Source: Macrostomum lignano | Taxonomy: Eukaryota | Assembly (NCBI GenBank): GCA_002269645.1 | Contig: NIVC01000572.1 | Span: 482,925 to 533,220, forward strand | Direction of reading: 5' to 3' | Length of the DNA stretch: 50,296 bases | Shown here: positions 1 to 35,350 of the stretch, piece by piece | Layout: each line of letters opens with the position of its first letter | How positions within the stretch are numbered: position 1 is the first letter of the stretch | The notes under the pieces: model-generated | What the model was told of the DNA's origin: nothing | The model's database searches: none | What the model saw: only the letters and a program-made list of their open reading frames with translations | Made by a program: the position numbers and the translations under genes

Positions 1-1114
1 CCAAATCCCTTAGCTAATGATCCCAAATCCCTTAGCTAATGATCCCAAATCCCTTAGCTAATGATCCCAAATCCCTTTGCTAAGCATCCCAAATCCCTTA
101 GCTAAGCATCCCAAATCCCTTAGCTAATGATCCCAAATCCCTTAGCTAAGCATCCCAAATCCCTTAGCTAAGCATCCCAAATCCCTTAGCAATAACATCC
201 CAAATCTCTTAGCAAAGCATCCCAAATCCCTTAGCTAAGCATCCCAAATCCCTTAGCTAATGATCCCAAATCCCTTAGCTAAGCATCCCAAATCCCTTAG
301 CTAAGCATCCCAAATCCCTTAGCAAAACATCCCAAATCTCTTAGCAAAGCATCCCAAATCCCTTAGCTAAGCATCCCAAATCCCTTAGCTAATGATCCCA
401 AATCCTTAGCTAAGCATCCCAAATCCCTTAGCTAAGCATCCCAAATCCCTTAGCTAATGATCCCAAATCCCTTAGCAAAGCATCCCAAATCCCTTAGCAA
501 AGCATCCCAAATCCCTTAGCTAATGATCCCAAATCCCTTAGCTAAGCATCCCAAATCCCTTAGCTAAGCATCCCAAATCCCTTAGCAAAGCATCCCAAAT
601 CCCTTAGCAAAGCATCCCAAATCCCTTAGCTAATGATCCCAAATCCCTTAGCTAAGCATCCCAAATCCCTTAGCTAAGCATCCCATATCCCTTAGCAAAG
701 CATCCCAAATCCCTTAGCTAATGATCCCAAATCCCTTAGCTAAGCATCCCAAATCCCTTAGCTAAGCATCCCAAATCCCTTAGCAAAGCATCCCAAATCC
801 CTTAGCAAAGCATCCCAAATCCCTTAGCTAATTATCCCAAATCCCTTAGCTAAGCATCCCAAATCCCTTAGCTAAGCATCCCATATCCCTTAGCAAAGCA
901 TCCCAAATCCCTTAGCTAAGCATCCCAAATCCCATAGCAAAGCATCCCAAATCCCTTAGCTAATGATCCCAAATCCCTTAGCTAAGCATCCCAAATCCCT
1001 TAGCTAAGCATCCCAAATCCCTTAGCTAAGCATCCCAAATCCCTTAGCTAAGCATCCCAAATCCCTTAGCAAGCATCCCAAATCCCTTAGCTAAGCATCC
1101 CAAATCCCTTAGCT
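1..1114. repeat. Minisatellite, 22-bp unit (ATCCCAAATCCCTTAGCTAAGC / ...CTAATG)
   Basis: About 50 tandem copies visible; runs off the window start. Confidence 0.97.
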
Positions 1115-1337
1115 GAGCATGGTGACACTTTAGTTCCTTGGCACCAGTTGCCAGCAGTTGAAATGCGAAGTCTTTTGTCAAGTAGTTATGTACGCCTGTG
1201 CCATGAAATATATTTTATGAATTTTATCATTGGAGCGAGGTATTCATGCCTCGCTGTATTTTACAGACATGTATCATCACTGTACTGAGCGTAAAATGAA
1301 CGAAATCACCACGTATTTTTACGTTATCTCAATGAGT

Positions 1338-1693
1338 GACGGACAGTGGCCGTAGCCCAGTGGTCTAGCGCAGGCTCTGGTGTGCCAGCGGTCCAGGCTC
1401 GATTCCAAGTGCAGTCACGTTAATTTGGGGCTAAATTGGATTCTCGGCTTGGCTCTGCTCGTGCAATCAACGCCCTTGAGGGCCAACCCCAAGGCACGGT
1501 GAAGTGTACTTGCCTAACGATAAAATAAAGTTAGGGCCGCTGTCCACTCCTTGCACTTGCGCTTGCGCTTGTGAGCCTACTCAGGGGAGTCTGCGGAATG
1601 GGCAGTAATGCCTCTCGCCGGTTGTGTGCCTATGTCGCTTAAAGTGCGCCAAGGTGCACACAACGGCCCTGCCTCTTCTACCTCTAATAAATA
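1338..1693 (+). mobile_element. tRNA-derived SINE (family 1)
   Basis: A-box-like TAGCCCAGTGG at 1353-1363, B-box-like GGCTCGATTCC at 1396-1406, (AATA)n tail, candidate 7-bp TSD AATGAGT at 1331-1337 and 1694-1700. Confidence 0.7.
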
Positions 1694-1730
1694 AATGAGT
1701 TAGGGAATGAGGATACGCTTGAGTCTGAAA

Positions 1731-3470
1731 ATTGGATTGGATGGGGTCAGGCAATTGGGTTGGATGGGGTCAGGCAATTGGATTGGATGGGTCAGGCAAT
1801 TGGGTTGGATGGGGTCAAGCAATTGGGTTGGATGGGGTCAGGCAATTGGATTGAATGTGGTCAGGCAATTGGATTGGATGGGGTCAGGCAATTGGATTGA
1901 ATGTGGTCAGGCAATTGGATTGGATGGGGTCAGGCAATTGGGTTGGATGGGGTCAAGCAATTTGGCTGGATGGGGTCAGGCAATTTGGCAGGATGGGGTC
2001 AGGCAATTGGGTTTGATGGGGTCAGGCAATTGGATTGGATGGGGTCAGGCAATTGGGTTGGATGGGGTCAGGCAATTGGATTGAATGTGGTCAGGCAATT
2101 GGATTGGATGGGGTCAGGCAATTTGGCTGGATGGGGTCAGGCAATTTGGCTGGATGGGGTCAGGCAATTTGGCTGGATGGGGTCAGGCAATTGGGTTGGA
2201 TGGGGTCAGGCAATTGGATTGGATGGGGTCAGGCAATTGGATTGGATGGGGTCAGGCAATTGGGTTGGATGGGGTCAGGCAATTGGATTGAATGTTGTCA
2301 GGCAATTGGATTGGATGGGGTCAGGCAATTGGATTGAATGTGGTCAGGCAATTGGATTGGATGGGGTCAGGCAATTGGATTGGATGGGTCAGGCAATTGG
2401 GTTGGATGGGGTCAAGCAATTGGGTTGGATGGGGTCAGGCAATTGGTTGGATGGGGTCAAGCAATTGGGTTGGATGGGGTCAGGCAATTGGGTTGGATGG
2501 GGTCAGGCAATTGGATTGGATGTGGTCAGGCAATTGGATTGAATGTGGTCAGGCAATTGGGTTGGATGGGGTCAGGCAATTTGGCTGGATGGGGTCAGGC
2601 AATTTGGCTGGATGGGGTCAGGCAATTGGGTTGGATGGGGTCAAGCAATTGGATTGGATGGGTCAGGCAATTGGTTGGATGGGGTCAGGCAATTTGGCTG
2701 AATGGGGTCAGGCAATTTGGCTGGATGGGGTCAGGCAATTTGGCTGGATGGGGTCAGGCAATTGGATTGGATGGGGTCAGGTTGGATGGGTCAGGAAATT
2801 TGGCTGGATGGGGTCAGGCAATTTGGCTCGATGGGGTCAGGCAATTGGATTGGATGGGGTCAGGCAATTGGATTGGATGGGGTCAGGCAATTGGATTGAA
2901 TGTTGTCAGGCAATTGGATTGGATGGGGTCAGGCAATTGGGTTGGATGGGGTCAGGCAATTTGGCTGGATGGGGTCAGGCAATTTGGCTGGATGGGGTCA
3001 GGCAATTGGGTTGGATGGGGTCAAGCAATTGGATTGGATGGGGTCAGGCAATTGGGTTGGATGGGGTCAGGCAATTGGATTGAATGTGGTCAGGCAATTG
3101 GATTAGATGGGGTCAGGCAATTGGGTTGGATGGGGTCAGGCAATTTGGCTGGATGGGGTCAGGCAATTTGGCTGGATGGGGTCAGGCAATTTGGCTGGAT
3201 GGGGTCAGGCAATTGGATTGGATGGGGTCAGGTTGGATGGGGTCAGGAAATTTGGCTCGATGGGGTCAGGCAATTGGATTGGATGGGGTCAGGCAATTGG
3301 ATTGGATGGGGTCAGGCAATTGGATTGAATGTGGTCAGGCAATTGGATTGGATGGGGTCAAGCAATTGGGTTGGATGGGGTCAGGCAATTGGATTGAATG
3401 TGGTCAGGCAATTGGATTGAATGTGGTCAGGCAATTGGGTTGGATGGGGTCAGGCAATAGGATTGAATGG
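1731..3470. repeat. Minisatellite, 23-bp unit (GGATTGGATGGGGTCAGGCAATT)
   Basis: About 75 tandem copies; accounts for all ORF-track entries from 1707 to 3630. Confidence 0.97.
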
Positions 3471-3763
3471 TGTCCTTAAACTCCCGATTCAAAGGTTGTT
3501 AATTAATTTTCTCAGATGTATATTTCACTGTGACGAGCCGGCACATCTGGATATATGCGCTATATACAGTATATCTTATTATTACTATAATATAGGTATT
3601 CATTACTTGCGCAGTAAAATGATATGGTGACTACTGTAATGCTAGATGCATTGCTTCGTTTATCTTATTACAAAAACAAATTGTCTTCAACAATTGCCAA
3701 CAGAAAGTTTTTTATCTAATCTCCCTATTGCACAAGCGCGTGCATAAATATCGTTTTATAGCG

Positions 3764-3848
3764 TCCGTCTGCCTGTCCGTCTGCCTGTCCGTCTGTCTGC
3801 CTGTCCGTCTGTCTGCCTGTCCGTCTGTCTTCCTGTCCGTCTGTCTGC
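3764..3848. repeat. Short (GTCC/GTCT/GCCT)n array
   Basis: Tandem 12/16-bp units GTCCGTCTGTCTGCCT. Confidence 0.85.
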
Positions 3849-4127
3849 GTCGCTACTTCCGCCAGCTGCCGCTCTGAAAGTGAAAATTAAAAACACTATA
3901 ATAATTTGTTTTAAATTCAGCAACATAAACACACTATACTGCTTTAAGAAGTTTCATCAGTAGAACAATCTGCGCATGAAAATTGTTTGTTTCATGGTCG
4001 ACTGTATGCAAATGTACTTGTAATATTTATCTCACCTTCTGAGACCTCTCAATTACAAACTGTGCAGGTACATGTACATTTGTACATATGTGCTTTGCCA
4101 ATTAGTGAAAACTGCAGCTTCGCTCAC

Positions 4128-4593
4128 CGTGTGGATTTCGTAGATGCAGTTGCGCAGCCGGCCGCCGCAGAACTCGTCCCGGTTGCCGTTGCAGCGCAGG
4201 TTGCACTCCCGTTCGCTCTTCTGTCCGTACAACCCGTAGGTGTTGCCGCAGAAGCACAGGCGCCCGTTCTGCAGCCCGAAGTACCGGTAGCGGAGCCTGT
4301 CGCACTCCCTGTAGCAGAACTCTACCGACATGCGGCTGCGGGCCACGTAGTTGGAGAGGTCCGCCGGCTGGTGTCGCCATAGCAACCAATGTAGGAGTAC
4401 TTCGGCCCTGCGATCGATAGGAGAATGGAAAAAATAACCCCAGTTCAGTTGAAAGACAGACAGACAGACAGACAGACATACATACAGACAGACAGACAGG
4501 CAGACAGACAGACAGACGGACACTAAGACAGACAGACAGGCAGGCAGGCAGACTGTCAGGCAGACAGACAGACAGACAGACAGACAGGCAGGC

Positions 4594-4636
<43 letters not shown>

Positions 4637-4750
4637 GACAGATGGACACTAAGACAGACAGACAGGCAAGCAGACAGAGCAGACAGACGGACAGACAGAG
4701 ACAGACAGACAGATGGACACTAAGACAGACAGACAGGCAGGCAGACTGTC

Positions 4751-4787
<37 letters not shown>

Positions 4788-4938
4788 GTCAGACGGACAG
4801 ACAGGCAGACAGACAGAGACAGACAGACAGATGGACACTAAGGAAGACAGACAGACAGACAGACAGAGCAGACAGACGGACAGACAGAGACAGACAGACA
4901 GATGGACACTAAGACAGACAGACAGGCAGGCAGACTGT

Positions 4939-4973
<35 letters not shown>

Positions 4974-5132
4974 ACGCACAGACAGACACTAAGACAGTCA
5001 GACAGACAACACAAGGAATCAAAACAGGCAAATTGCCTGTCAAATAGATGCCTTACGGTATTGTTCAGCAGTACAGCCAGCTATGAAGAACAGTGCTGCT
5101 GCAGCCAGATACAAAATGGTTAATTTCGACAT
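4128..5132 (-). CDS. Secreted single WSC-domain protein (apparent 1-nt frameshift in exon 2; 3' end uncertain)
   Basis: Exon 1 5132-5057 encodes a signal-peptide-like [25 protein letters not shown] with a phase-1 GTAAG donor. Exon 2 4407-4128 follows a pyrimidine tract and CAG and encodes YIGCYGD..R[D]L...MSVEFC...C...YFGLQNG..CFCGN...C...C.G...E.CGG...IY, the WSC cysteine pattern. One extra G is needed near 4361 (CGG[G]AC) to join the two frames. A possible micro-exon lies at 4059-4036. Confidence 0.8.
4452..5008. repeat. (AGAC)n compound microsatellite in WSC gene intron 1
   Basis: AGAC/AGGC tetramers punctuated by GACACTAA. Confidence 0.95.
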
Positions 5133-6350: not shown

Positions 6351-8203
6351 ACTAATATATGTTGTTGTATTGCTATTTTGTGTCGAAAAATATACGTCTG
6401 TTTAAAAATGCAATTGCATTTTTATGTTTACGTCAACTACATGTAAATGTGTATGCCAGTGTGCACATTTTTAATTCCCAAGTCGATCATACTTGTATTT
6501 TTTGAGCCAACAAAGCCTAAAAAATTCTTCAAAGTTTTCCTAACTATTGTACAGCACCGCATATGCAGTAGACATATGATACATCTACCATGACTGTCAA
6601 TGTCTGTCAATCCAACCTTATATACATGCTTGTACATGTGCCAAATTGTATTTTTTTAATGTTACATGTAGCACTATAGCTTAGCTACCGATTCATCTTC
6701 ACCCAGCACAACTCCTGGGGAAGAGGTCGGCTTCTTGTTCTAAAGTGACCTTCATTTTTATTATATTTTTTGCGCTCTCAAAAGTCCGACTTACTGGAAC
6801 TCTAAAAAGACCATTGCGTGAGCCCGCATGCGCCTTTCAGCAGTTTAAACAAAAATTCACAGTTCTCATTTATATGAGTGATAAAATCAACGTAAATCCA
6901 TAAAATATCTTGTAAAAGTTACAATTTATTACTTTGCTTTGGGTAAAAATGTGAATTTAATATTTTCATATTCATGGGGAATTTTTAACTTAAGGAGACG
7001 ATGCCAATTTTTAGATCCTTGTTAACTGTTGTTCAACTACATATCCGTGTGCCAATTATTTCAAAGGCTGTATAAATTCTTTAACGGCTAAATGCTGAAT
7101 CAATAAATCAAAGTAATTTGAACCTTATAGTATAACACTTTATGCCAACCTCATCTCATCTGAATCGTCTACTGATTTATTTAAATTCAATTTATTCAGT
7201 TGTCATCACCTTACCTAAAGTAAAGACCAATTTTCTAGCCTCCTAGCTCCAAAGCATAAAGCAAGCACAAAGTAGTTAGCTACTTTGCTAATTAAGCTAT
7301 ATTTAATCCAGGCTTTCTATATTGAAAACTTGAAAATGCATTAAGTATGGATGATGTAGGCCTGATTTTTTAAGTAAAATTTAGAAGCCTGATGGCGATG
7401 CTTTAAAGCAGAAGTTATGAGTATGATTTTTGTTTGTTGCATTATCCTTCTGAATAATTTTCAGACAGTCACTTTAAAATTATTGAAAAAGCTATTGCTA
7501 ATCTAGTAAGCCTATTGTAATTTTTAAACTAGAATTTCATCAACATGTATACTATATTATATATATAGTGATCATCCCATTTGGCATTAATACTGAATAT
7601 TATTTGTTAGTATCTCATAATCTTTTACTATACTCCATTGCCATTTTATAGACTATAAAATCTAATATGAAAAAATAAATTTATAAGTTGCAATTTTGTA
7701 ATAATAAAATATATTAAAATGAAATAATAGATAAAATAAAAAGTTTCAGTAAGGCATAACTGCCATTGAGTTTCACTACTACAAATTTTTTTTTCTTTGA
7801 CCTAATCTATATCCAATCCATAGGTGTACCTAGATTTTTCTTATAATAGTCTGACTACTATGAATATCCATAGTTAATTAATATCCCTAGGCTATAACCT
7901 ATAACTTGATATCAATAATTGAACTTATTACTTATTAATAATGTCTCATTTAATTACCTTAATATATAAGAAGAATGTCTAAACTTGTATTGTTTGAACA
8001 CCTGACCCTAGGGACTTTAGAGTTCCCTTCTTAAAAGCTACTGGCAAAATTTATTCATTTCTATTGCTTTACCACCGTCTGCCGAAGTGGCCACCATGTT
8101 GCTACTATTGCGCGTTCAGGGACGCCAACACGCACAGCCACTTTGCTAGCACTTTCATCACTGCACTTGGTGGCAAGCGTGGAGGTGCTTAGTACGCGGA
8201 GGT

Positions 8204-9991
8204 ATGCACTGCAGTTTGAGCCACCGCGGAACAAGCAGTCCTGCTAATGCGACCAGCCTAGAGAGAGCAGCCGGTATGGCGAGCCGACCCCGCAATTTGG
8301 CAAGCGAGGGAAGAGCTGGAGAGACACCGTTTGAGCAGGCGACCAACACGCGAGGCAGAGGAGGCTCTGCTGCTGGGCCCGATACCAGAGGCCGCGTGGC
8401 CTGGTCGGCTATCAATGCTCTGACAGGGCGAAAGCGGCGCATTCCGCTAAACCTGGCAGGCGACTCTGCGGACGAGCGCAGGAACGAGCTGCGTGAGTTC
8501 TTCGACGCCGTTGTCAACGCGCCGCCACCCCCGCTGCCAGACAGTCTGACGCTGCCGCCGGAGATGTCGTTGCCGGCAAAGGAGAGCTTCAGCCTAGCAC
8601 CAGTCAGCACAGCCGACGTTGTGAGGTTCGCCCAACAGTCACCGGGCGGGAAAGCGCTGGGTCCGGACGAGGTGCCCATCGAGGCGCTGCGCATCCACTG
8701 TGTGGCCAGTGGGGTCGCCAGCGTGATGAACTGCGTGCTTTTCGGTGAGGCGGCACCCAACGAATGGACCACGGCGCACATCGTCGCAGTTCCAAAGAAG
8801 CCGGGCACCACGAGGCTTGAGGAGCACCAAGGCATCTGTCTGCAGTCCTGTGCTGCGAAGTTGTTCAACCGGTTGCTGTTATCGCGGTTGCAGCCCGTGC
8901 TGGATCCGTACCTGCGTCCTGAGCAGAACGGCTTCCGGCCCCATCGCGGCACAGTGACGCAGATCCTGGCTCTTCGGCGAGTCATCGAGAAAGCACGGAT
9001 ACGTCAGTCGATCCTGATTGTTATCTTTATAGATTTCAAGAAGGCATTCGACTCGGTCGTCAGGTCTGTGCTCCCAAAGGTGCTCCGTGCGTACAACGTG
9101 CCAGAGCAGCTGATTTCCGCCATCATGGCGATGTACCGTGATACGAAAGCTGCTGTTTCAACACCAGACGGCCTATCGGACTTCTTTGAGACATTTTCCG
9201 GGGTGCTTCAGGGAGATACGCTTGCGCCGTTCCTGTTCGTTCTGGTGCTTGACTGGGTGCTGCGGACCGCTCTTCCTACCAACGATGACGGCTTTCTGTT
9301 ACGGCGACGCGTCGGTCGACGTCAACCGGAGAGGCGGCTCAGCGTGCTTGGCTACGCCGACGACCTCGCCTTGCTGTCCTCAACTGTCGAGGGCGCCCAG
9401 CGACAACTGGACAAGCTAGATGATGTTGCGGCGAGTGTCGGCCTGGTGGTCAACACGCAGAAGACCATCGTGCTCTGCGTGCCAGACGACATCGAGGCAG
9501 CGATTTTGTGCCGAGGCGCTGATGGACAGGCGACAGAGCTTCCGCGTTGTCAGCAGTTCGTCTACCTCGGCAATCTAGTTCCCGGTGTCCGCGAGGATTT
9601 GCGGCGTCGCCGCGGGCTCGCCTGGGCTGCCTTTCGTTCTGTGAGGGCAGCCCTGCAGTCCGAGGCCTTACCTGACCGCCAGAGGGCGGCGTTGTTCCAG
9701 GCGGTGATCGATACCGTCCTGCTGTACAACGCCGAGTCGCTGACGGAGTCGCTCGAGCAGCAAGTTGACGCGGCGCACGCTGGCCTGCTGCGCGCCGCCT
9801 TCAAAATCGGCGACAAGCGAGTGACCAACGCGGCTTTGTATCGCCGCGCCGGCCTGGTCCGTCCAAGCGACCTGCTGCGCCGTCGGCGACTCCAGCTGGC
9901 AGGCCACATCATCCGTGCCGAGTCGAACTGCCCAGAGCCGGTTCTTCTTCATTCTTCTTCTTCATCTTCGGGTCACGGACATTGTAGCTAG
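8204..9991 (+). CDS. Reverse transcriptase of the RTE-like LINE (N-truncated, C-terminus displaced by the nested insertion)
   Basis: Motifs KALGPDEVP, EQNGFR..R.T..QI..LR...EK, FIDFKKAFDSV, GVLQGDTLAPFLF, YADD, GLVVNTQKT, FVYLG and RRRRLQLAGHIIR. Removing the insertion rejoins CPEP-VQVLLLTLQAPYRRGQERAL* in frame, with the stop at 10397-10399. Confidence 0.9.
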   Translation: MHCSLSHRGTSSPANATSLERAAGMASRPRNLASEGRAGETPFEQATNTRGRGGSAAGPDTRGRVAWSAINALTGRKRRIPLNLAGDSADERRNELREFFDAVVNAPPPPLPDSLTLPPEMSLPAKESFSLAPVSTADVVRFAQQSPGGKALGPDEVPIEALRIHCVASGVASVMNCVLFGEAAPNEWTTAHIVAVPKKPGTTRLEEHQGICLQSCAAKLFNRLLLSRLQPVLDPYLRPEQNGFRPHRGTVTQILALRRVIEKARIRQSILIVIFIDFKKAFDSVVRSVLPKVLRAYNVPEQLISAIMAMYRDTKAAVSTPDGLSDFFETFSGVLQGDTLAPFLFVLVLDWVLRTALPTNDDGFLLRRRVGRRQPERRLSVLGYADDLALLSSTVEGAQRQLDKLDDVAASVGLVVNTQKTIVLCVPDDIEAAILCRGADGQATELPRCQQFVYLGNLVPGVREDLRRRRGLAWAAFRSVRAALQSEALPDRQRAALFQAVIDTVLLYNAESLTESLEQQVDAAHAGLLRAAFKIGDKRVTNAALYRRAGLVRPSDLLRRRRLQLAGHIIRAESNCPEPVLLHSSSSSSGHGHCS

Positions 9992-10326
9992 ACGATGTAG
10001 CTAATAGGACCGGGTGCCTAGCACCATGCAGTCGGGGCGCTGACTCCGCGTGGGCGGACAGTAGATGGTAAAATCCAATTTGCGGCCTGCGGCGGGTGGC
10101 CAGAAAGCAAGGGAACCCGAGTCCCGGTGCGCAGGGCTCCTCCGCAGACCGACTTACGCTGTAAAAAGCGCCACCCACCGCCAACCTAATGGTGAGGGAC
10201 AGCTCCAGGCTGCATACCCGGAGGTGAGACCAATTCGTCACCCCGTCGATGGCAGGGACGGACGGAGCTCCTGCCACATTGGCGGGGTGTCCAGGGGCGC
10301 GACGTGGATGCTGGTCTCGTGCCACC
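9943..10326 (-). mobile_element. 384-bp non-autonomous retroposon headed by an HDV-like ribozyme
   Basis: Exact 12-bp TSD CCCAGAGCCGGT at 9931-9942 and 10327-10338; (GAA)n-type 3' tail on the minus strand; no RT and no Pol III A/B boxes seen. Confidence 0.9.
10226..10326 (-). ncRNA. HDV-like (CPEB3-type) self-cleaving ribozyme
   Basis: Minus strand: P1 GGUGGC/GCCCCU (G1.U wobble, one U-C mismatch); P2 GAGACCA/UGGUCUC; P3 GCA/CGC (one A-C mismatch); L3 UCCACGU; P1.1 CC/GG; P4 CACCCCG/CGGGGUG with inner stem UGGCAGG/CCUGCCA; J4/2 ACGAAU with the catalytic C at 10237. Confidence 0.85.
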
Positions 10327-10772
10327 CCCAGAGCCGGTGCAGGTGCTGCTGCTGACGCTGCAGGCACCCTACCGGCGGGGACAGGAGCGCGCCCTGTGAC
10401 GCTAACCTGCGTATTCTATTGTTGTTGTTGTTGTTGTATTGCTTTACCCTTCAAGCATAAAATCAATGGCTCTAATAGTCTTTTAGTGGCCAATAATATT
10501 AAACACAGGAACTGTATATCTTCTTGCAACTTTCCATAGCCATACCTGCTGCTATGGTAGAGTCAAATATATTATCAAATAATTATACTCTTTAAATACG
10601 AATAATAGGCCTATATCAGTTCTCTAAATTAAAACTGCAATTAGCTATGGAGTTATATCATTATGCTTAGATTTTATTTTTGTATAAAAATGTGTCATCT
10701 ATAAGCAGACAAAGCCATTATTGGGCCTGACAGATTCTATTGAAAATAATACAATGATTTCAGCCAACAGTC

Positions 10773-12017
10773 ATGGCATCTGAAGACAATTACTATGCCA
10801 TCCTTGAGATCAACCCAGACGCTTCTGAGGCTGAGGTGCGCAAAGCCTACAGGCAAATGGCACTTCGCTGGCACCCAGACAAGAATCAGACAAATCCTGA
10901 TGAGGCTGAACGCCGGTTCAAACTCATCAGCGAGGCCTACGAGGTATTGAAAATTCACGTTGATATATGTATGTTTTGCTATTATAATTAATCATCGCTT
11001 GACTCTACTGCTCTCAGTAGAAAAATTAGCACACGATAGAATTTTTATCAGAATACGTTATATTACTAATAATAGTTGCTTGACTCTACTTTTGTCAGTA
11101 GAAAAATTAGCACACTACAGTTATTTTTTAAGAAATAAGAAATAATCCGACCAAATATCTGCCAGGTTCTGTCCGACCCGGAGAAGCGGCGAATCTACGA
11201 TTTCTACGGCAAGGAAGGCCTCGCTGAGGCGGCGGCGGCTGAAGAGGGTGAAACCAGGGCAGACGATTTCTTCCGCCGTCAGCAACAGCAGCAGCAGCAG
11301 CGCCAGCAGCAGCGACAGCAACGCAGCTATCAGCCGCGCCACGACAGAGATTGGTACGACCAGCATCAGTATCATTTCCGCGATCCACGCGACGTATTTC
11401 GCGACTTTTTTGGGCCGAGCGACCCGTTCTCGCGCATTTTCAACCCGGACCCGTTCAAGGTAAGAACAGCAACAATGTGATACGTGATATCGGATTAGTC
11501 GTAAGAATACTGCACAAATCCTCATTTTTCTACTTAGAAACTCTATATAAGTAGAGTGTTGCAGATATTCTTCATATTTTTTAATTGGCATTGTCGGTTA
11601 AATTTCCAACCAACCCATCAGACGCTAGAGGAGTCGATGCGCGACATCGGCGACCGGCACCGCGCCAGCAACAACATCGGAGGGCCCGGCAGCAACTTCT
11701 TTAACTTCGCCAACTTCAACCAGCACACCGGCGCCGGCTTTGCCTCGTCGTCCAATACGGCCGGCGCAGGCCGGTCGTCTAGAAACGCAGCCAGCAGCGG
11801 CCGAGGCGGCAGTCAGCGGTTCGCGCCGCTGCACTCCACCCGGGTGACGCAGACCTTCACAAACACGCGCGATGGCAGGCGGGTGGTGGTGCACAAGGTG
11901 GTGGAGAACGGGGTGGAGACGGTCACTGAGACTGTGGACGGCCGGGTGACGAAGAAAACAGTGGACGGCCGTCTTGTCGCTGGCGGTGACCAGCAGCCGA
12001 GCATCCGGGTCAAGTGA
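10773..12017 (+). CDS. DNAJB6: DnaJ class B co-chaperone, DNAJB6/B2/B8-like, about 286 aa
   Basis: Exons 10773-10943, 11166-11459 and 11622-12017, all GT-AG phase 0. J domain with [22 protein letters not shown] region, and a C-terminal STRVTQ...[16 protein letters not shown] segment typical of DNAJB6. Confidence 0.9.
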
Positions 12018-12654: not shown

Positions 12655-14770
12655 TTGCGCCTATAACGCACTGAGAATCGCCCATAACACACTGAACATC
12701 GCCATAACACACTGAGAATCGTTCATAACAGATAATCGCCCATAGGCCATAACACACTGAGAATCGTTCATAACACACAGATATAATCGCCCATAGGCCA
12801 TAGCACACTGAGAATCGTTCATAACACACAGATAATCGCCCATAGGCCATAGCACACTGAGAATCGTTCATAACACACAGATAATCGCCCATAGGCCATA
12901 GCACACTGAGAATCGTTCATAACACACAGATAATCGCCCATAGGCCTTACACACTGAGAATCGTTCATAACACACAGATAATCGCCCATAGGCCATAGCA
13001 CACTGAGAATCGTTCATAACACACAGATAATCGCCCATAGGCCATAGCACACTGAGAATCGTTCATAACACACAGATAATCGCCCATAGGCCATAACACA
13101 CTGAGAATCGTTCATAACACACAGATAATCGCCCATAGGCCATAGCACACTGAGAATCGTTCATAACACACAGATAATCGCCCATAGGCCATAACACACT
13201 GAGAATCGTTCATAACACACAGATAATCGCCCATAGGCCATAGCACACTGAGAATCGTTCATAACACACAGATAATCGCCCATAGGCCATAGCACACTGA
13301 GAATCGTTCATAACACACAGATGATCGCCCATAGGCCATAACACACTGAGAATCGTTCATAACACACAGATAATCGCCCATAGGCCATAGCACACTGAGA
13401 ATCGTTCATAACACACAGATAATCGCCCATAGGCCATAACACACTGAGAATCGTTCATAACACACAGATAATCGCCCATAGGCCATAACACACTGAGAAT
13501 CGTTCATAACACACAGATAATCGCCCATAGGCCATAGCACACTGAGAATCGTTCATAACACACAGATAATCGCCCATAGGCCATAGCACACTGAGAATCG
13601 TTCATAACACACAGATAATCGCCCATAGGCCATAACACACTGAGAATCGTTCATAACACACAGATAATCGCCCATAGACCATAACACACTGAGAATCGTT
13701 CATAACACACAGATAATCGCCCATAGGCCATAGCACACTGAGAATCGTTCATAACACACAGATAATCGCCCATAGGCCATAACACACTGAGAATCGTTCA
13801 TAACACACAGATAATCGCCCATAGGCCATAGCACACTGAGAATCGTTCATAACACACAGATAATCGCCCATAGGCCATAACACACTGAGAATCGTTCATA
13901 ACACACAGATAATCGCCCATAGGCCATAACACACTGAGAATCGTTCATAACACAGATAATCGCCCATAGGCCATAACACACTGAGAATCGTTCATAACAC
14001 AGATAATCGCCTATAGGCCATAACACACTGAGAATCGTCCATAACACACTGAGAATCGTCCATAACACACAGATAATCGCCCATAGGCCATAACACACTG
14101 AGAATCGTTCATAACACACAGATAATCGCCCATAGGCCATAGCACACTGAGAATCGTTCATAACACACAGATAATCGCCCATAGGCCATAACACACTGAG
14201 AATCGTTCATAACACACAGATAATCGCCCATAGGCCATAACACACTGAGAATCGTTCATAACACACAGATAATCGCCCATAGGCCATAACACACTGAGAA
14301 TCGTTCATAACACAGATAATCGCCCATAACACACATATATAATCGCCCATAGGCCATAGCACACTGAGAATCGTTCATAACACACAGATAATCGCCCATA
14401 GGCCATAACACACTGAGAATCGTTCATAACAGATAATCGCCCATAGGCCATAACACACTGAGAATCGTTCATAACACACAGATAATCGCCCATAGGCCAT
14501 AACACACTGAGAATCGTTCATAACACACAGATAATCGCCCATAGGCCATAACACACTGAGAATCGTTCATAACACAGATAATCGCCCATAGGCCATAACA
14601 CACTGAGAATCGTTCATAACACAGATAATCGCCTATAGGCCATAACACACGGAGAATCGTTCATAACACAGATAATCGCCCATAGGCCATAACACACTGA
14701 GAATCGTTCATAACACAGATAATCGCCTATAGGCCATAACACACGGAGAATCGTCCATAACACACAGATA
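12655..14770. repeat. Minisatellite, 49-bp unit (ATAACACACAGATAATCGCCCATAGGCCATAGCACACTGAGAATCGTTC)
   Basis: About 42 copies; the unit is a dimer of related 22- and 27-bp subunits. Confidence 0.97.
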
Positions 14771-15244
14771 ATGACAATTTTGACGACCCCGAGAATTGAT
14801 TATCCATTAATTCGATTTGCGGAAGCCAAAATTTCAATTTTTTTCCAGTGCTAATTTTCAGTTAAAAATATTTGTAATAATTATTTGTGCAGTTGCTACC
14901 GTGCTCCATAAATGCAGATATCAAAACGATTTGATTTTTTTCCTGTAAAGTGTTTTTTTCTAATGCTATTTAGTATTCACCCATCATTTAAAATGACGAC
15001 CCTGTGATGGAGCCGCAGGCTTTGATCAAGTATTATCTAGAACATTTCATTTCCTAGCTTTTCATTCCAGTTACAAGTTAAATCAGCTTGTCACCCATTA
15101 AATATAATATATTTGAAATCTGTATCCAAGATACCTGCATTAAACCGGAAAATATTTTATTTAATTCAATAGTAGCTTGCAAACTATCTTTGCTGATTTT
15201 CAGTACATGTACACTGCCCTAACAACTGCCAAGGCTACTCAGAA

Positions 15245-16685
15245 CCTGGAGTGCCAAGGGATCAATTCAGCATCTGGAGTGCCAAGGCAATTTAGAATCT
15301 GGGAATTCAGCACCACTTGGAGTACCAAGGCAATTCAGCACCTGGAGTGCCAAGGGAATTCAGCACTTGGAGTGCCAAGGGATTCAGCACCACTTGGAGT
15401 ACTAAGGCAATTCAGCACCTGGAGTGCCAAGGGAATTCAGCACTTGGAGTGCCAAGGCAATTCAGCACCTGGAGTGCCAAGGGTATTCAGCACCTGGAGT
15501 ACCAAGGCAATTCAGCATCTGGAGTGCCAAGGAAATTTAGAATCTGGAGTGCCAAGGCAACTCAGCATCTGGAGTGCCAAGGAAATTTAGAATCTGGAGT
15601 GCCAAGGCAATTCAGCATCTGGAGTGCCAAGGAAATTTAGAATCTGGAGTGCCAAGGCAATTCAGCATCTGGAGTGCCAAGGAAATTTAGAATCTGGAGT
15701 GCCAAGGCAACTCAGCATCTGGAGTGCCAAGGAAATTTAGAATCTGGAGTGCCAAGGCAATTCAGCATCTGGAGTGCCAAGGAAATTTAGAATCTGGAGT
15801 GCCAAGGCAATTCAGCATCTGGAGTGCCAAGGAAATTTAGAATCTGGAGTGCCAGGGCAATTTAGCATCTGGAGTGCCAAGGCAATTCAGCATCTGGAGT
15901 GCCAAGGAAATTTAGCATCTGGAGTGCCAAGGCAATTCAGCATCTGGAGTGCCAAGGAAATTTAGAATCTGGAGTGCCAAGGCAATTCAGCATCTGGAGT
16001 GCCAAGGAAATTTAGAATCTGGAGTGCCAGGGCAATTTAGCATCTGGAGTGCCAAGGCAATTCAGCATCTGGAGTGCCAAGGAAATTTAGAATCTGGAGT
16101 GCCAAGGCAATTCAGCATCTGGAGTGCCAAGGAAATTTAGAATCTGGAGTGCCAGGGCAATTTAGCATCTGGAGTGCCAAGGCAATTCAGCATCTGGAGT
16201 GCCAAGGAAATTTAGCATCTGGAGTGCCAAGGCAATTCAGCATCTGGAGTGCCAAGGAAATTTAGAATCTGGAGTGCCAAGGCAATTCAGCATCTGGAGT
16301 GCCAAGGAAATTTAGAATCTGGAGTGCCAGGGCAATTTAGCATCTGGAGTGCCAAGGCAATTCAGCATCTGGAGTGCCAAGGAAATTTAGCATCTGGAGT
16401 GCCAAGGCAATTCAGCATCTGGAGTGCCAAGGAAATTTAGAATCTGGAGTGCCAAGGCAATTCAGCATCTGGAGTGCCAAGGCAATTTAGCATCTGGAGT
16501 GCCAAGGCAATTCAGCATCTGGAGTGCCAAGGCAATTTAGAATCTGGAGTGCCAAGGGAATTCAGCATCTGGAGTGCCAAGGCAATTTAGAATCTGGAGT
16601 GCCAAGGCAATTCAGCATCTGGAGTGCCAAGGCAATTTAGAATCTGGAGTGCCAAGGGAATTCAACACCACTTGGAGTGCCAAGT
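15245..16685. repeat. Minisatellite, 25-bp unit (GGAGTGCCAAGGCAATTCAGCATCT) with higher-order structure
   Basis: About 55 copies with alternating variants. Confidence 0.97.
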
Positions 16686-17319
16686 GGTATCTGGGCTAGA
16701 CTTGTATCTGCAACAATTGAGCAAACAATCCGAAAAAAGTAAAGGCGTGCTCAAGAAACCAGCCGGACTCCTGGCAGGCGTTCAATAAACAACAATATCA
16801 GGCTCAAGAAGTCCGTCACTCAGTTATACAATAATAACAACTGCAATGGACAAGGCTACACAGGACTCGTATATTCAAGCAGCTATGAGACAATAGCGTG
16901 ATTATTGCAACAATAAGCATTTCAATGTCAAGCAGCAGCATTAGAATAGGTGGTAAAGAAAACAAAGACAAAAGTTCATATCAACTCAAAATAACAAAAA
17001 AGGAACGGAGGAAAAGCAAAACAAGATTTAGAATAGAAGTGTAAAGAGAATAACAGTTCCATTGAAGTATTGCTTTGCAGTCAGCAATAAACCTGTCAAA
17101 AATGATGCAATCAGTTAAATTGAAACGGCGGTCTTTATTGCTCGAAGGTTCAATGAATCGTAAACCAAATAGTTTATTTACATAACAATTAAGAAGACAT
17201 TGGAACTGGCCTTGCCAGCGTTAAATAACAGAAATACGAGTTAATGAGGACTTGCTGCAGTCTGCACTTTATTGTCAGAAACTGCAGGATTTACGAAGCA
17301 CTTTTAAAACCACCCCATA

Positions 17320-17680
17320 CCTGCAGGGATAGATTAGCAATCCATTCTTTTCAATACCTGCAGGGATAGATTAGCAATCCATTCTTTTCAATACCTGCAG
17401 AAATAGATTAGCAATCCATTCTTTTCAATACCCGCAGGGATAGATTAGCAATCCATTCTTTTCAATACCTGCAGGGATAGATTAGCAATCCATTCTTTTC
17501 AATACCTGCAGGGATAGATTAGCAATCCATTCTTTTCAATACCTGCAGGGATAGATTAGCAATCCATTCTTTTCAATACCTGCAGGGATAGATTAGCAAT
17601 CCATTCTATTCCCTAACTGCAGGGATAGATTAGCAATCCATTCTATTCCCTAACTGCAGGGATAGATTAGCAATTCATTG
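17320..17680. repeat. Minisatellite, 37-bp unit (ACCTGCAGGGATAGATTAGCAATCCATTCTTTTCAAT)
   Basis: About 10 copies, probably within the 3' UTR region of the RRM gene. Confidence 0.95.
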
Positions 17681-17865
17681 CAGCACTTAACAAAATGCTA
17701 CAATAAAAGTTGACTTGCACAGTTCAAATAAAACAATGTAACGCAACAAGATGTTAATCTTGAATAAGCAAGCAAAACAAACAGTTGGAGAGTGATTAGA
17801 ATTAAGATGCGAGCGAGAACGTCTTCCCCCTCCCCCCCCAATCAAAGGAATCAAAGCTGAATGAG

Positions 17866-18001
17866 TTAATAATTGCCATTTCCGCTAGCTGTGTACCAAG
17901 CCGGGTAAGACTGCTGCTGGAGCTGCTGCTGGTGCACGTAGCCACCGGGGCCGCCGCCCCCGCGCGGCCTTGCATGGGGCCGGTGGAACTGCTGCTGGTT
18001 G

Positions 18002-18036
<35 letters not shown>

Positions 18037-19323
18037 ATGCGGCTGGCGAGGCAAGTAGAAATTGCGGCCACCCCGGCTGCCGCTGAACGGAGGCCGGACC
18101 TTCTTTTCGTTCTCGTCGGCGAAGCGGATCTGCGCGGCAACGGGAGAACGCCGAAAGCATATATACAGTATAATATATATGTACATGGTAAATTTCAGAT
18201 CTCACATTCTAATCGTTAATCCTTTTAAATGCCTATGCCAGATTCCACACCCATTTCAAATATCCCATATTTCATTCAGATCCCACATCCCAATGTAAAA
18301 TCCCATATCCCAATGTCAGATCCCAAATCATAATTTCAGATCCCAAATCCCAATTTCCGATCCCAAATCCCAATTTCCGATCCCACATCCCAATTTCAGA
18401 TCCCAAATCCCAATTTCAGATCCCACATCCCAATTTCAGATCCCAAATCCCAATTTCAGATTCTAAATCCCAATTTCAGATCCCACATCCCAATTTCAGA
18501 TCCCAAATCCCAATTTCAGATCCCACATCCCAATTTCAGATCCCAAATCCCAATTTCAGATTCTAAATCCCAATTTCAGATCCCACATCCCAATTTCAGA
18601 TCCCAAATCCCAATTTCAGATCCTAAATCCCAATTTCAGATCCCACATCCCAATTACAGATCCCGAATCCCAATGTCAGATCCCACATCCCAGTGTCAGA
18701 TCCCACCACATCCCAGTGTCAGATCCCACATCCGTGTCAGACCACACATTCCAAGTTCAGATCCCACATCCCAATGTCACCTGCACAAGCTGCTGTTCCG
18801 AGTTGGCAGCCGAGTCGCCAGATGCAGCAGGCCAGGGCCTGTTGTGCAGGGCATCCAGAGCGGCCTGGGCCGAGCTGTGAGTTTCGAACAAGCAGAAGCC
18901 GAGCAGACCGCGCGGAGCCACCGCCGGCTGCTGCTGCTGCCCCTGCAACAAGCGGCAGTTAATAATCGGACCGAATCTTCCCAGCACCTGTTGCAGAGCC
19001 TCCTCTGTGATGCCGAACGGCAGGCAGGAGATGTGCAGCTTGCAGTTTCTGGTCTCCTCGCTGCGCAGGCGGGCGAAGGCCACTTTAATAGTTTTCCTGC
19101 CCAGCTGGTGGCCGTTCAGGTTGTCTATGGCCCGGGCCGCGGCCTCGTGCGAGTTGTAGTCGCAGAAGCCGTAGCCGTAGCTGTAGCCTGTGGCGTTGTT
19201 GCGGCAGATCTTCACCGACTTCACGCCCGGAGCCAGAGAGTCGAACAGCTTATGGAGCTCGTCGTCTCTAAGCTCCTGCGGCAGGTAGTTCACGATTAGG
19301 TTCGTGTCGGAGTACTGGGCCAT
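17866..19323 (-). CDS. Sex-lethal/ELAV-family RNA-binding protein: two RRMs plus a Gln-rich tail, about 268 aa
   Basis: Exon 19323-18781 contains TNLIVNYLPQ...TGYSYGYGFCDY...IKVAFAR...KLHISCLP and ends at CAG|GTGACA. Exon 18129-17866 starts IRFADENEKK, carries polyQ and ends at the stop. The phase-0 join gives LVQ-IRFADE, completing RRM2. An upstream in-frame ATG at 19386 is possible. Confidence 0.88.
18300..18776. repeat. Intronic minisatellite, 20-bp unit (AGATCCCAAATCCCAATTTC)
   Basis: About 22 copies inside the RRM gene intron. Confidence 0.95.
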
Positions 19324-19489
19324 GCCTCTGATTGGCTGCGTAGTCAACAGTGAGTGAGCCTTTAGCAGCGAGGATGGCGACAGCATGAAATGTTGGATAG
19401 AATAGAGCAGCTTGCTTACTAGTGTGATTTGATTACCTGTGGCATCTCAGTTTTGGGATCAGTGTTCAAGATTACAGAAGAGACTATGG

Positions 19490-20795
19490 GATTACGGTTT
19501 GGGATTAGGGATCAATGATTACGGTTTTGGAATCTATGATTACGATTTGGGATCTATGATTACGGTTTGGGATCTATGATTACGATTTGGGATCTATGAT
19601 TACGGTTTTGGGATCTATGATTACGGTTTTGGAATCTATGATTACGGTTTGGGATCTATGATTATGGTTTTGGGATCTATGATTACGGTTTTGGGATCTA
19701 TGATTACGGTTTGGAATTTATGATTACGGTTTTGGGATCTATGATTACGGTTTGGGATCTATGATTATGGTTTTGGGATCTATGATTACGATTTGGGATC
19801 TATGATTACGGTTTTGGGATCTATGATTACGGTTTGGGATCTATGATTACGATTTGGGATCTATGATTACGGTTTTGGGATCTATGATTACGGTTTTGGA
19901 ATCTATGATTACGGTTTGGGATCTATGATTATGGTTTTGGGATCTATGATTACGGTTTGGGATCTATGATTACGGTTTGGAATTTATGATTACGGTTTTG
20001 GAATCTATGATTACGGTTTGGGATCTATGATTATGGTTTTGGGATCTATGATTACGATTTGGGATCTATGATTACGGTTTTGGGATCTATGATTACGGTT
20101 TTGGAATCTATGATTACGGTTTGGGATCTATGATTATGGTTTTGGGATCTATGATTACGGTTTTGGGATCTATGATTACGGTTTGGAATTTATGATTACG
20201 GTTTTGGGATCTATGATTACGGTTTGGGATCTATGATTATGGTTTTGGGATCTATGATTACGATTTGGGATCTATGATTACGGTTTTGGGATCTATGATT
20301 ACGGTTTGGGATCTATGATTACGATTTGGGATCTATGATTACGGTTTTGGGATCTATGATTACGGTTTTGGAATCTATGATTACGGTTTGGGATCTATGA
20401 TTATGGTTTTGGGATCTATGATTACGGTTTTGGGATCTATGATTACGGTTTGGAATTTATGATTACGGTTTTGGGATCTATGATTACGGTTTGGGATCTA
20501 TGATTATGGTTTTGGGATCTATGATTACGGTTTTGGGATCTATGATTACGGTTTGGGATCTATGATTACGATTTGGAATCTATGATTATGGTTTTGGGAT
20601 CTGGGATTACGATTTGGGATTATGGTTTTGGAATCAGGGATTATGGTTTTGGGATCTGGGATTACAGTGTTGAGATTTTATATTACGGTTTTAGGATCTA
20701 AGATTGCGGCTTTGGGATCTGGGATTACAGTTTTGGGATCTGTGATTACGGTTTAGGGGTCTGGGATTACGGTTTTGGGGATTAAGATTGCGGTT
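19490..20795. repeat. Minisatellite, 20/21-bp unit (GGGATCTATGATTACGGTTT(T))
   Basis: About 60 copies between ORC2 and the RRM gene. Confidence 0.96.
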
Positions 20796-21247
20796 TTGGT
20801 ACATTGGATTATTTTGGGGATTTTTGGTCCAGAACCCGAAGATACTAACCTAGATCAGCCTCTGAGCCTCTTTAAGTGTAAAAAATTAGTAAACACGTAA
20901 AGAAAACGACATGACAGAATGAAAATTTGATAAGTTCAGGCGTAAAAGTAATAACTGCGGCTCGTTTTTGTAATAAAAATGCTTACAACTATTGCACAAT
21001 AGATTAATATTATTACTATTTACGTGATAGCACCAACATGAAAAAAAAACAAATTACGTTAGAAAATAAAAATTCTATGCTCGAGAACATTATTGGGCAG
21101 CAACAATTTTAGCATTAAAAAGCTGCATGAATGGTTAGCAGACTACTCATAGTAGCAGCTGCAAAATATTAAATACAAAGTGATATATAATGCGGCTATG
21201 GGGTCAAACAGGCGACTTCCTAATTTTCAAGGGGCGATTCGAAAGGG

Positions 21248-21500
21248 GCGGATTGGGGCGATTCTCATGGGGGTGGATTGGGGCGATTCTCAAGGGGGCA
21301 GATTGGGGCGATTCTCATAGGGGGCGGATTGGGGCGATTCTCATAGGGGGCGGATTGGGGCGATTCTCATAGGGGGCGGATTGAGGCGATTCTCATAGGG
21401 GGCGGATTGGGGCGATTCTCATAGGGGGCGGATTGGAGCGATTCTCATAGGGGGCGGATTAAGGCGATTCTCATAGGGGCGGATGGGACGATTCTCAAGG
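21248..21500. repeat. Minisatellite, 26-bp unit (GGATTGGGGCGATTCTCATAGGGGGC)
   Basis: About 9 copies just downstream of the ORC2 stop. Confidence 0.93.
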
Positions 21501-21544
21501 GTTTCAGAGGTTCCAGCTGACTCTCAGGGCGCCAGGCCGCAGTG

Positions 21545-33864: not shown

Positions 33865-33897
<33 letters not shown>

Positions 33898-34391: not shown

Positions 34392-34444
34392 CTGCGATGA
34401 CTGCAAATGCTATGATAACTATATGGGCCGCTCAGGTAGCATAG

Positions 34445-34631
34445 CAGCTTATCTTACTGTCAGTTCAGTAGCAAGGAAGGATATGTAAGCTATTTTTTAA
34501 AAGAAAATGCCAGTTGGGTTTGTAGCCAGTGCAAATAAACGAGTTCTTTTGTCTTAAAAATGATTAAATGTTTCTATTCAACGTTCTACTGAAAGTAGCT
34601 TGCACGCAAATGTGCCGAGTGGCCTATCTAG
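34445..34631. mobile_element. Internally deleted copy of the 12202-12644 MITE
   Basis: CAGTTCAGTAGCAAGGAAGG...AAGCTATTT and ACTGAAAGTAGCTTGCACGCAAATGTGCCGAGTGGCCTATCTAGTT match both ends of that element. Confidence 0.6.
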
Positions 34632-35307: not shown

Positions 35308-35350
35308 TTTTAATTCTGATTATGATACTTTTTCTGGGAATGTTAACTTG

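What the first reader, a model, noticed from the sequence alone, without database searches (positions are those of the whole stretch)
9931..10338. Ribozyme-headed, Pol III-independent SINE-like element nested antisense in an RTE LINE
Seen: a 384-bp non-coding unit with ribozyme head, GC-rich body, (GAA)n tail and 12-bp TSD, splitting the LINE ORF at CPEP|V. The host LINE also has a 12-bp TSD and a trinucleotide tail, (TTG)n. No A/B boxes were seen. Inference: a short internally deleted or independently built parasite of an RTE-type LINE that uses read-through transcription plus self-cleavage instead of a promoter, analogous to R2 SIDEs or trypanosomatid SIDERs. It may be an undescribed family in this lineage. 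The different tails suggest the mobilising LINE is a sister family rather than the host copy.
Basis: partly seen in the sequence, partly recalled or inferred. Interest (0 to 1): 0.85.

Follow-up and report, generated by a model that had tools for sequence, protein, structure and literature searches.

The report
Ribozyme-headed short retroelement in a flatworm LINE
A 384-bp non-coding retroelement sits inside a LINE of the flatworm Macrostomum lignano and starts exactly with a sequence that folds like an HDV-type self-cleaving ribozyme; this is a new example of a known trick (cutting one's own 5' end out of a read-through transcript), and I could not test whether it belongs to a multi-copy family.

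Summary
Window 9943-10326 (sense on the minus strand) is a 384-bp insert flanked by an exact 12-bp target site duplication. It ends in an imperfect (GAA)n tail and splits the reading frame of a 5'-truncated RTE LINE, which has its own 12-bp duplication and a (TTG)6 tail. The "ribozyme head" is real in silico. Nt 1-101 fold into the HDV-like nested double pseudoknot, and the predicted cleavage site lies within 1 nt of the duplication boundary. A strict descriptor hits only this position in the window, against about 0.25-0.75 hits per Mb in random sequence. Of 4227 Rfam families the best match is HDV_ribozyme over the full model, but below threshold (21.4 bits, E 0.19). This copy has one defect in P1 and one in P3. 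The source is Macrostomum lignano (NIVC01000572.1). No second copy, partner LINE or homologous ribozyme could be retrieved, so "SINE-like family mobilised by a sister RTE" remains inference. The closest known elements are R2 SIDEs, NARTc/L1Tc and HDV-like-headed RTEs. It is a new member of a known kind, of moderate interest.

The parts
9931..9942 (.). Target site duplication, copy next to the element's 3' tail (CCCAGAGCCGGT on +; ACCGGCTCTGGG in element sense)
   Evidence: Exact 12/12 repeat of 10327-10338
10327..10338 (.). Target site duplication, copy next to the element's 5' end. Its last base in element sense (G10327) could equally be the ribozyme's first base.
   Evidence: the Rfam alignment register starts P1 at 10327
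9943..10326 (-). Whole 384-bp non-coding retroposed element
   Evidence: Bounded by the duplication; excising it restores the host LINE ORF; no protein homology in any frame
10226..10326 (-). HDV-like self-cleaving ribozyme candidate, element nt 1-101 (window = 10327 - nt)
   Evidence: Strict descriptor hit only here; random expectation 0.25-0.75 per Mb; best Rfam family RF00094, full model, 21.4 bits, E 0.19; all drawn pairs canonical
10321..10326 (-). P1 5' strand (nt 1-6 GGUGGC); predicted cleavage is 5' of G1. It pairs with nt 29-34 (10293-10298), with G1.U34 and a U3xC32 mismatch.
10312..10318 (-). P2 5' strand (nt 9-15 GAGACCA); 7 perfect pairs with nt 95-101 (10226-10232)
10299..10311 (-). 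P3 (nt 16-18 / 26-28; G-C, C-G, AxC) enclosing L3 UCCACGU (nt 19-25). C20 and C21 pair with G36 and G35 (10291-10292) to form P1.1.
10239..10289 (-). P4, a long imperfect hairpin (nt 38-44/82-88, 46/80, 50-57/71-78)
   Evidence: Present in the MFE fold
10233..10238 (-). J4/2 ACGAAU (nt 89-94) with the putative catalytic C90 at window 10237, directly before P2'
   Evidence: Aligned to the model's GGCuAAu; CNRA term of the descriptor
10163..10167 (-). Internal T5 run (nt 160-164) in the sense strand, inside a small hairpin GCGCU-UUUUAC-AGCGU
   Evidence: A Pol III terminator-like run in mid-element (inference from general knowledge).
9985..10003 (-). 3' stem-loop UAGCUA-CAUCGUC-UAGCUA (nt 324-342), a candidate RT recognition hairpin
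   Evidence: MFE of the last 84 nt; function inferred
9943..9969 (-). Imperfect (GAA)n microsatellite tail (nt 358-384)
   Evidence: no such repeat at this site in the uninterrupted relative L002
8074..10436 (+). Host: a 5'-truncated RTE-clade LINE copy interrupted by the element. Duplication TATTGCTTTACC at 8062-8073 / 10437-10448; (TTG)6 at 10419-10436.

Best explanation
The insert is a short, non-coding, non-autonomous non-LTR retroelement of Macrostomum lignano whose first ~101 nt encode an HDV-like self-cleaving ribozyme. Proposed mechanism: a source copy with no promoter of its own is transcribed as part of a longer Pol II read-through transcript. The ribozyme folds (P1, P1.1, P2, P3, P4) and cleaves immediately 5' of its own first G, so the whole ribozyme stays on the downstream RNA and defines its 5' end. 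A LINE reverse transcriptase supplied in trans recognises the 3' hairpin and (GAA)n tail, nicks a target, and copies the RNA to its very 5' end by target-primed reverse transcription. This produces a 12-bp target site duplication. Here the target happened to be an RTE LINE, in antisense orientation. Shown: the insert and its boundaries, the duplication, the tail, the absence of coding capacity or a Pol III head, the HDV-like fold, and the coincidence of its cleavage site with the insert's 5' end. Inferred: catalytic activity, read-through transcription, mobilisation in trans, family status, and the identity of the partner (RTE-like is plausible but unsupported).
For: The duplication, tail and ORF restoration are. 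The HDV-like fold has P1 of 6 bp starting with G.U, P2 of 7 perfect bp, P3 with L3 UCCACGU, a two-pair P1.1 (C-G, C-G), a long P4, and J4/2 ACGAAU with C90. A strict descriptor hits the window once, at 10326(-), the first base after the duplication. Composition-matched random sequence gives 1, 3 and 1 hits per 4 Mb. RF00094 HDV_ribozyme is the top match among 4227 families, on the right strand, over model positions 1-89 of 89, with P1 starting within 1 nt of the boundary. The two long helices P2 and P4 are already in the pseudoknot-free MFE. There is no tRNA, 5S or 7SL signal, and there is an internal T5 run. No similarity to RT or endonuclease proteins was found in any frame. R2 ribozymes tolerate P1 mismatches, a P3 mismatch and a variable P4 (PMC3774820). 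Ribozyme-headed non-autonomous elements exist elsewhere (PMC3414825; PMC3383444 and PMC3185411). The first duplication base (A) matches the last tail base, as reported for RTE-related retroposons (PMC6007223).
Against: Only one copy was seen: none elsewhere in the window and none in L127/L128. No homologous ribozyme or element was retrieved, so there is no covariation support. The Rfam score is far below gathering (21.4 vs 50). This copy has a U3xC32 mismatch (or a U3 bulge) in P1 and an AxC in P3, so it may be inactive. Overall folding energy is not unusual (z = -1.1 for 110 nt, -0.3 for 384 nt). Nt 1-7 can instead pair with 73-79. My descriptor was written after I had seen the sequence. The host RTE family and three sister RTEs share neither head nor tail and show no HDV-like head. 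The T-stretch near P-10 reported for some RTE-related insertions is absent.
Confidence: 0.6

Rival explanations
1. A one-off product: a single internally deleted (or template-switched) copy of an autonomous ribozyme-headed LINE, made at or after this insertion event, and not a propagating non-autonomous family.
For: Only one copy was observed in about 100 kb of M. lignano DNA. No trace was found in 15 billion predicted proteins or in JGI metagenomes. The head and tail are what the two ends of a LINE would contribute.
Against: No remnant of a LINE ORF in any frame. Internal deletions are rare compared with the output of an established short family (general knowledge). The DNA sampled is far too small to call the element single-copy.
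Confidence: 0.22
2. The ribozyme resemblance is fortuitous. The insert is simply a 5'-truncated 3' fragment of a (GAA)n-tailed LINE, or another retrocopy, that happens to start here.
For: The Rfam score is below threshold. Two helix defects are present. Folding energy is unremarkable. Most LINE insertions are 5' truncated (general knowledge). Sense frame 2 is open over all 127 codons (P about 0.02 per frame).
Against: A full HDV-like architecture begins exactly at the insert's first base. The expected rate of such hits is about 0.25-0.75 per Mb, and an independent covariance model picks the same fold and register. The open frame has no homologues.
Confidence: 0.1
3. A conventional Pol III SINE whose small-RNA-derived head was not recognised.
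For: Its size (384 bp), microsatellite tail and duplication are typical of a SINE.
Against: ARAGORN and Rfam find no tRNA, 5S, 7SL or snRNA similarity. T5 and T4 runs at nt 160 and 254 would terminate Pol III.
Confidence: 0.04

Closest known systems
R2 SIDEs and R2/R1 hybrid SIDEs of Drosophila (PMC3414825)
   Same: Short, ORF-less non-LTR elements made of a 5' HDV-like ribozyme plus a LINE 3' end. The 5' end is made by self-cleavage of a co-transcript, and the elements are mobilised in trans. The hybrid SIDEs show that head and tail can come from different LINE families.
   Different: SIDEs insert site-specifically in rDNA and their parents (R2, R1) are identified. This insertion is in an RTE LINE, no parent is known, and family status is unproven.
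NARTc / L1Tc (L1TcRz) and related trypanosomatid elements (PMC3185411, PMC3383444, PMC4035085)
   Same: A dispersed non-autonomous element that carries the same 5' HDV-like ribozyme as its autonomous LINE.
   Different: These belong to the ingi/L1Tc clade, have poly(A) tails, and the same 77 nt also act as an internal promoter. Here there is a (GAA)n tail, no evidence of a promoter, and the host is a flatworm.
[quoted passage not shown] 2011, as summarised in PMC6765202)
   Same: The same ribozyme class in the same position, with the same proposed role of release from a read-through transcript. RTE elements are among the known carriers.
   Different: Those are autonomous elements. The RTEs examined here (host family and three sisters) show no such head.
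Flatworm ribozyme-bearing retroelements: twister variants at the 5' end of Perere-3 (PMC8501958) and the hammerhead SINE-like Sm-alpha (PMC6765202)
   Same: Same phylum and the same strategy. Duplications abut the ribozyme cleavage site in Perere-3.
   Different: A different ribozyme class. No twister or hammerhead signature is present here (motif inspection).
Mammalian CPEB3 ribozyme and the Rfam HDV_ribozyme consensus
   Same: The core is strikingly similar: L3 UCCACGU, P3' CGC, P1' GCCCCU, GG for P1.1, and J4/2 CGAAU before P2' (alignment). The CPEB3 comparison is from my own knowledge and was not tool-checked.
   Different: P4 is much longer. P1 and P3 each carry a defect. The score is below Rfam gathering. 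The context is a retroelement rather than an intron or a viral genome.

Membership tests
HDV-like self-cleaving ribozyme (fold class) | P1 of 6-7 bp that starts at the cleavage site with G1.U and pairs with the strand directly 3' of P3 | tested here: met
   nt 1-6 / 29-34 with G1.U34: 5 pairs plus one U3xC32 mismatch (or a U3 bulge in the CM register). This is within the range seen in R2 ribozymes.
HDV-like self-cleaving ribozyme (fold class) | P2 pseudoknot of at least 5 bp between the segment after P1 and the 3' end | tested here: met
   nt 9-15 / 95-101, 7 Watson-Crick pairs
HDV-like self-cleaving ribozyme (fold class) | 3-bp P3 closing a 7-8 nt L3 whose C residues pair with GG after P1' (P1.1) | tested here: inconclusive
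   L3 UCCACGU and P1.1 (C20-G36, C21-G35) are present. P3 has only 2 pairs plus A18xC26, which could reflect decay of a CpG (inference).
HDV-like self-cleaving ribozyme (fold class) | Catalytic C in J4/2 (CNRA) immediately before P2' | tested here: met
   A89-C90-G-A-A-U94 followed by P2'
HDV-like self-cleaving ribozyme (fold class) | Compensatory changes in the helices among homologues | not testable with these tools
   No homologue was retrieved
HDV-like self-cleaving ribozyme (fold class) | Self-cleavage 5' of G1 | not testable with these tools
   Needs an in vitro transcription/cleavage assay
Rfam RF00094 HDV_ribozyme (the viral family proper) | Score at or above the gathering threshold (50 bits) | tested here: not met
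   21.4 bits, E 0.19. It is the best of 4227 families but below threshold, and there was no hit in the larger scans. I therefore file it as HDV-like by fold, not as a member of RF00094.
Non-LTR retroelement inserted by target-primed reverse transcription | Target site duplication, a 3' simple-repeat tail, and interruption of an otherwise contiguous sequence | tested here: met
   12/12 duplication, (GAA)n tail, host ORF restored on excision and colinear with L002
Classical SINE | Pol III head derived from tRNA, 5S or 7SL with internal promoter boxes | tested here: not met
   No ARAGORN or Rfam signal; internal T5 and T4 runs
Classical SINE / SIDE / NARTc-type non-autonomous family | Many dispersed copies with different flanks | tested here: inconclusive
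   One copy in the 50-kb window and none in about 48 kb of paralogous M. lignano DNA. The genome itself could not be searched.
SIDE / NARTc-type (internally deleted LINE derivative) | 5' ribozyme and/or 3' end shared with an identified autonomous LINE | tested here: inconclusive
   No shared head or tail with the host RTE family (L001-L003) or sister RTEs (L004-L006). The only match is a 20-nt stretch to an RTE 3' terminus (E 0.02).
RTE-mobilised short retroposon | Insertion signature: the first duplication base matches the last base of the microsatellite tail, with a T-stretch about 10 nt upstream (PMC6007223) | tested here: inconclusive
   An A-first duplication with an A-ending tail fits, but there is no upstream T-stretch, and n = 1

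The most novel reading that the evidence does not exclude
This may be the founding example of a multi-copy family of HDV-like-ribozyme-headed, promoter-less SINE-like elements in Macrostomum lignano, mobilised by an RTE-type LINE with a (GAA)n tail. Flatworm non-LTR elements would then use a third ribozyme class, alongside the hammerhead of Sm-alpha and the twister of Perere-3. It would also provide a tractable, transgenesis-capable animal in which to study ribozyme-dependent retrotransposition.
Probability: 0.3. Interest if true: 0.55.

Novelty: new member of a known kind. Interest (0 to 1): 0.38.

Why it matters
If this is a real family, it extends ribozyme-defined 5' ends from autonomous LINEs and a few special cases (rDNA SIDEs, trypanosomatid NARTc) to a dispersed short element in a free-living flatworm model. 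It would also add HDV-like ribozymes to the twister and hammerhead motifs already tied to flatworm retroelements. In practice it would give genome annotators a head motif for a class of SINE-like repeats that Pol III-based SINE finders miss. It does not open a new mechanism.

Tried and rejected
1. My first manual fold used P1 = nt 1-7/73-79, which leaves a 40-nt insert between P2 and P3. I dropped it once the register P1 = 1-6/29-34 gave a canonical HDV-like topology, with 38-88 as P4.
2. Twister was rejected: the conserved L4/L2 motifs listed in PMC8501958 are absent and there is no Rfam hit. Hammerhead was rejected: there is no CUGANGA...GAAA core and no Rfam hit.
3. My first loose HDV descriptor gave hundreds of hits per 100 kb and was discarded. 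It was replaced by the strict descriptor with random-sequence controls.
4. I tried to find copies through translated frames. The search for homologous proteins and the full HMMER scan of 1.84 billion representatives gave nothing. The single hit, P0121, is a translated tandem repeat.
5. Degenerate-peptide scans of JGI metagenomes and IMG/VR gave nothing.
6. An exact 18-mer of the ribozyme core against metagenomes returned 120 hits, all chance matches in GC-rich bacterial contigs with random flanks. A 23-mer against GTDB genomes gave 0 hits.
7. I searched for a partner LINE in full-length relatives of the host RTE (L001, L003) and in sister RTEs (L004-L006). None has an HDV-like head by Rfam or by descriptor, and none shares the tail.
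8. I tried to reach the paralogous site for an empty-site test through exact-protein look-ups of window ORFs. These were not on record. The paralogous loci I did obtain (L127-L129) cover only window ~29-50 kb.
9. A coding role for the fully open sense frame 2 was rejected: it has no homologues and no Pfam domain, and the chance probability is about 0.02 per frame.
Full report
**Observation**

The window is from Macrostomum lignano. An exon in the window is 100% identical to BOX15_Mlig023439g3. Locus L129, from GCA_002269645.1 contig NIVC01000572.1, is 100% identical to window 30779-50296.

- CCCAGAGCCGGT occurs at 9931-9942 and again at 10327-10338.
- The 384 bp between the two copies (9943-10326) are 61% GC.
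- Read on the minus strand, they end in GAAGATGAAGAAGAAGAATGAAGAAGA.
- The insert lies in a 5'-truncated RTE-type LINE at 8074-10436. This LINE has an RVT_1 domain, and its full-length relatives carry Exo_endo_phos + RVT_1. The closest named relatives are M. lignano reverse transcriptases.
- The LINE has its own 12-bp duplication TATTGCTTTACC (8062-8073 / 10437-10448) and a (TTG)6 tail.
- Removing the insert and one repeat copy restores ...AESNCPEP|VQVLLLTLQAPYRRGQ.... This is colinear with the uninterrupted metagenomic relative L002. L002 therefore serves as an empty-site proxy.

**The head**

Whole-window Rfam scans found nothing. My first manual attempt at a fold was unconvincing. A second register gives a textbook HDV-like nested double pseudoknot:
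- P1: nt 1-6 / 29-34, with G1.U34 and a U3xC32 mismatch.
- J1/2: A7, C8.
- P2: nt 9-15 / 95-101, seven perfect pairs.
- P3: nt 16-18 / 26-28 (G-C, C-G, AxC), closing L3 UCCACGU.
- P1.1: C20-G36 and C21-G35.
- P4: nt 38-88, a long imperfect hairpin.
- J4/2: ACGAAU, with C90 in the position of the catalytic cytosine, directly before P2'.

Three checks speak against chance.
1. A strict descriptor encoding these consensus features hits the 100.6 kb of both strands exactly once, at 10326(-), the first base after the duplication.
2. The same descriptor gives 1, 3 and 1 hits per 4 Mb in Markov sequence trained on the GC-rich LINE plus element, on the element alone, and on the window. I wrote this descriptor after seeing the sequence, so its significance is overstated by an unknown but not enormous factor.
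3. An independent model agrees. When only 121 nt are scanned, the best of 4227 Rfam families is RF00094 HDV_ribozyme. It matches on the minus strand across model positions 1-89 of 89, at 21.4 bits and E 0.19, and it aligns L3, P3', P1', GG and C-AAU as in my fold.

That score is well below the gathering threshold of 50 bits, so I call the structure HDV-like by fold and not a member of RF00094.

The covariance-model register starts P1 one base earlier, at G10327 with U3 bulged. Because the duplication ends in GGG, both registers place the cut within 1 nt of the boundary.

P2 and P4 are already the main helices of the pseudoknot-free MFE. Overall stability is unremarkable (z = -1.1 and -0.3).

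The defects in P1 and P3 mean this particular copy may be inactive. R2 ribozymes tolerate P1 mismatches in about a quarter of elements, a P3 mismatch occurs in Nasonia, and P4 is highly variable (PMC3774820). GCG to GCA in P3 is the change expected from CpG decay (inference).

**Body and tail**

- No frame resembles RT or endonuclease proteins or any Pfam family.
- Sense frame 2 is open throughout but has no homologue among 5.8 billion clusters or 1.84 billion representatives. Its openness has a chance probability of about 0.02 per frame.
- There is no tRNA, 5S, 7SL or snRNA signal.
- T5 and T4 runs at nt 160 and 254 would terminate Pol III (the termination rule is from general knowledge).
- A 6-bp hairpin UAGCUA-CAUCGUC-UAGCUA (nt 324-342) precedes the tail. 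This is the usual layout of stringent LINE/SINE 3' ends (inference).

**Mechanism**

The 5' end of a full-length reverse transcript coincides with the predicted cleavage site of a ribozyme that remains entirely on the downstream product. The most economical reading has three steps:
1. The source copy is transcribed as part of a read-through transcript.
2. The ribozyme cleaves itself free at G1.
3. A LINE enzyme acting in trans copies the RNA by target-primed reverse transcription.

Only the anatomy is shown here. Activity, read-through transcription and the trans-acting partner are inferred.

**Family and partner**

- The element is single-copy in the window and absent from about 48 kb of paralogous M. 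lignano DNA.
- The M. lignano genome could not be searched with the tools available.
- Translated-frame tricks, metagenome scans and exact-word scans returned nothing or only chance hits.
- Full-length relatives of the host RTE and three sister RTEs share neither head nor tail, and show no HDV-like head.

The hints for an RTE-type partner are weak:
- The tail is a microsatellite.
- The 12-bp duplication is the same length as the host RTE's.
- The first duplication base (A) matches the last tail base, as reported for RTE-related retroposons. The upstream T-stretch reported in the same study is missing (PMC6007223).
- A 20-nt internal stretch (nt 154-173) resembles the terminal hairpin of RTE 3' UTRs (E 0.02).

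A one-off internally deleted LINE copy cannot be excluded.

**Comparison and novelty**

[quoted passage not shown] So are ribozyme-headed non-autonomous derivatives: R2 SIDEs and R2/R1 hybrids (PMC3414825) and NARTc (PMC3383444). [quoted passage not shown]
- In flatworms, twister variants head Perere-3 (PMC8501958) and hammerheads sit in Sm-alpha.
- I found no paper in the held library that links HDV-like ribozymes to Macrostomum or other flatworm retroelements. That library is incomplete.

**Verdict**

- The element is a new member of a known kind.
- Interest is moderate, at about 0.38.

Noticed in passing
window 30779-50296; L127, L128, L129: The window is the terminal 50.3 kb of M. lignano contig NIVC01000572.1. 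Two paralogous loci exist in the same assembly: NIVC01001599.1 at ~99% identity and NIVC01000546.1 at ~89-97%. They differ mainly in minisatellite array lengths, which is consistent with recent large-scale duplication.
   Followed up: partly
window 1-5008, 12658-22918, 33580-50296: The window is exceptionally dense in minisatellite arrays with 20-49 bp periods (50 TRF rows). Some lie inside long ORFs, for example a 28-bp array at 43931-44405 within the Na/Ca-exchanger gene region.
   Followed up: no
window ~10385-10400 versus L002: The host RTE copy lacks about 100 bp of the 3' coding/UTR region that is present in the metagenomic relative L002.
   Followed up: no
window 10154-10173 (element nt 154-173); L006 3910-3929; L002 3' end: The internal hairpin GCGCUUUUUACAGCGUAAG resembles the hairpin + GUAG/GUAA motif that ends RTE 3' UTRs just before their microsatellite. 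It could be a fossil RTE 3' end inside the element, or it could be chance (E 0.02).
   Followed up: partly
window 10272-10278 and 10320-10326 (element nt 49-55 and 1-7): GGUGGCA at the 5' end is nearly repeated as UGUGGCA inside P4. Both can pair with nt 73-79, which gives a possible alternative, non-catalytic fold.
   Followed up: no
L004 1-100 and L005 1-115: Two sister RTE elements from JGI metagenomes begin directly after 17-18-bp tandem repeats ending in ...TTTTCA. This could be 5' monomer repeats of the element or a satellite-specific insertion preference.
   Followed up: no
window 18757-19386 (-) and 11556-12017 (+): Exons of an RRM (ELAV-like) gene and of a gene with a DnaJ-B-like C-terminal region lie within 2-9 kb of the element. 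Neither ORF is on record as an exact annotated product.
   Followed up: partly
L001 293-348 (-): A sub-threshold Rfam match to the archaeal C/D snoRNA sR42 (23.3 bits, E 0.0019) falls in the 5' UTR of an RTE. It is almost certainly spurious.
   Followed up: no
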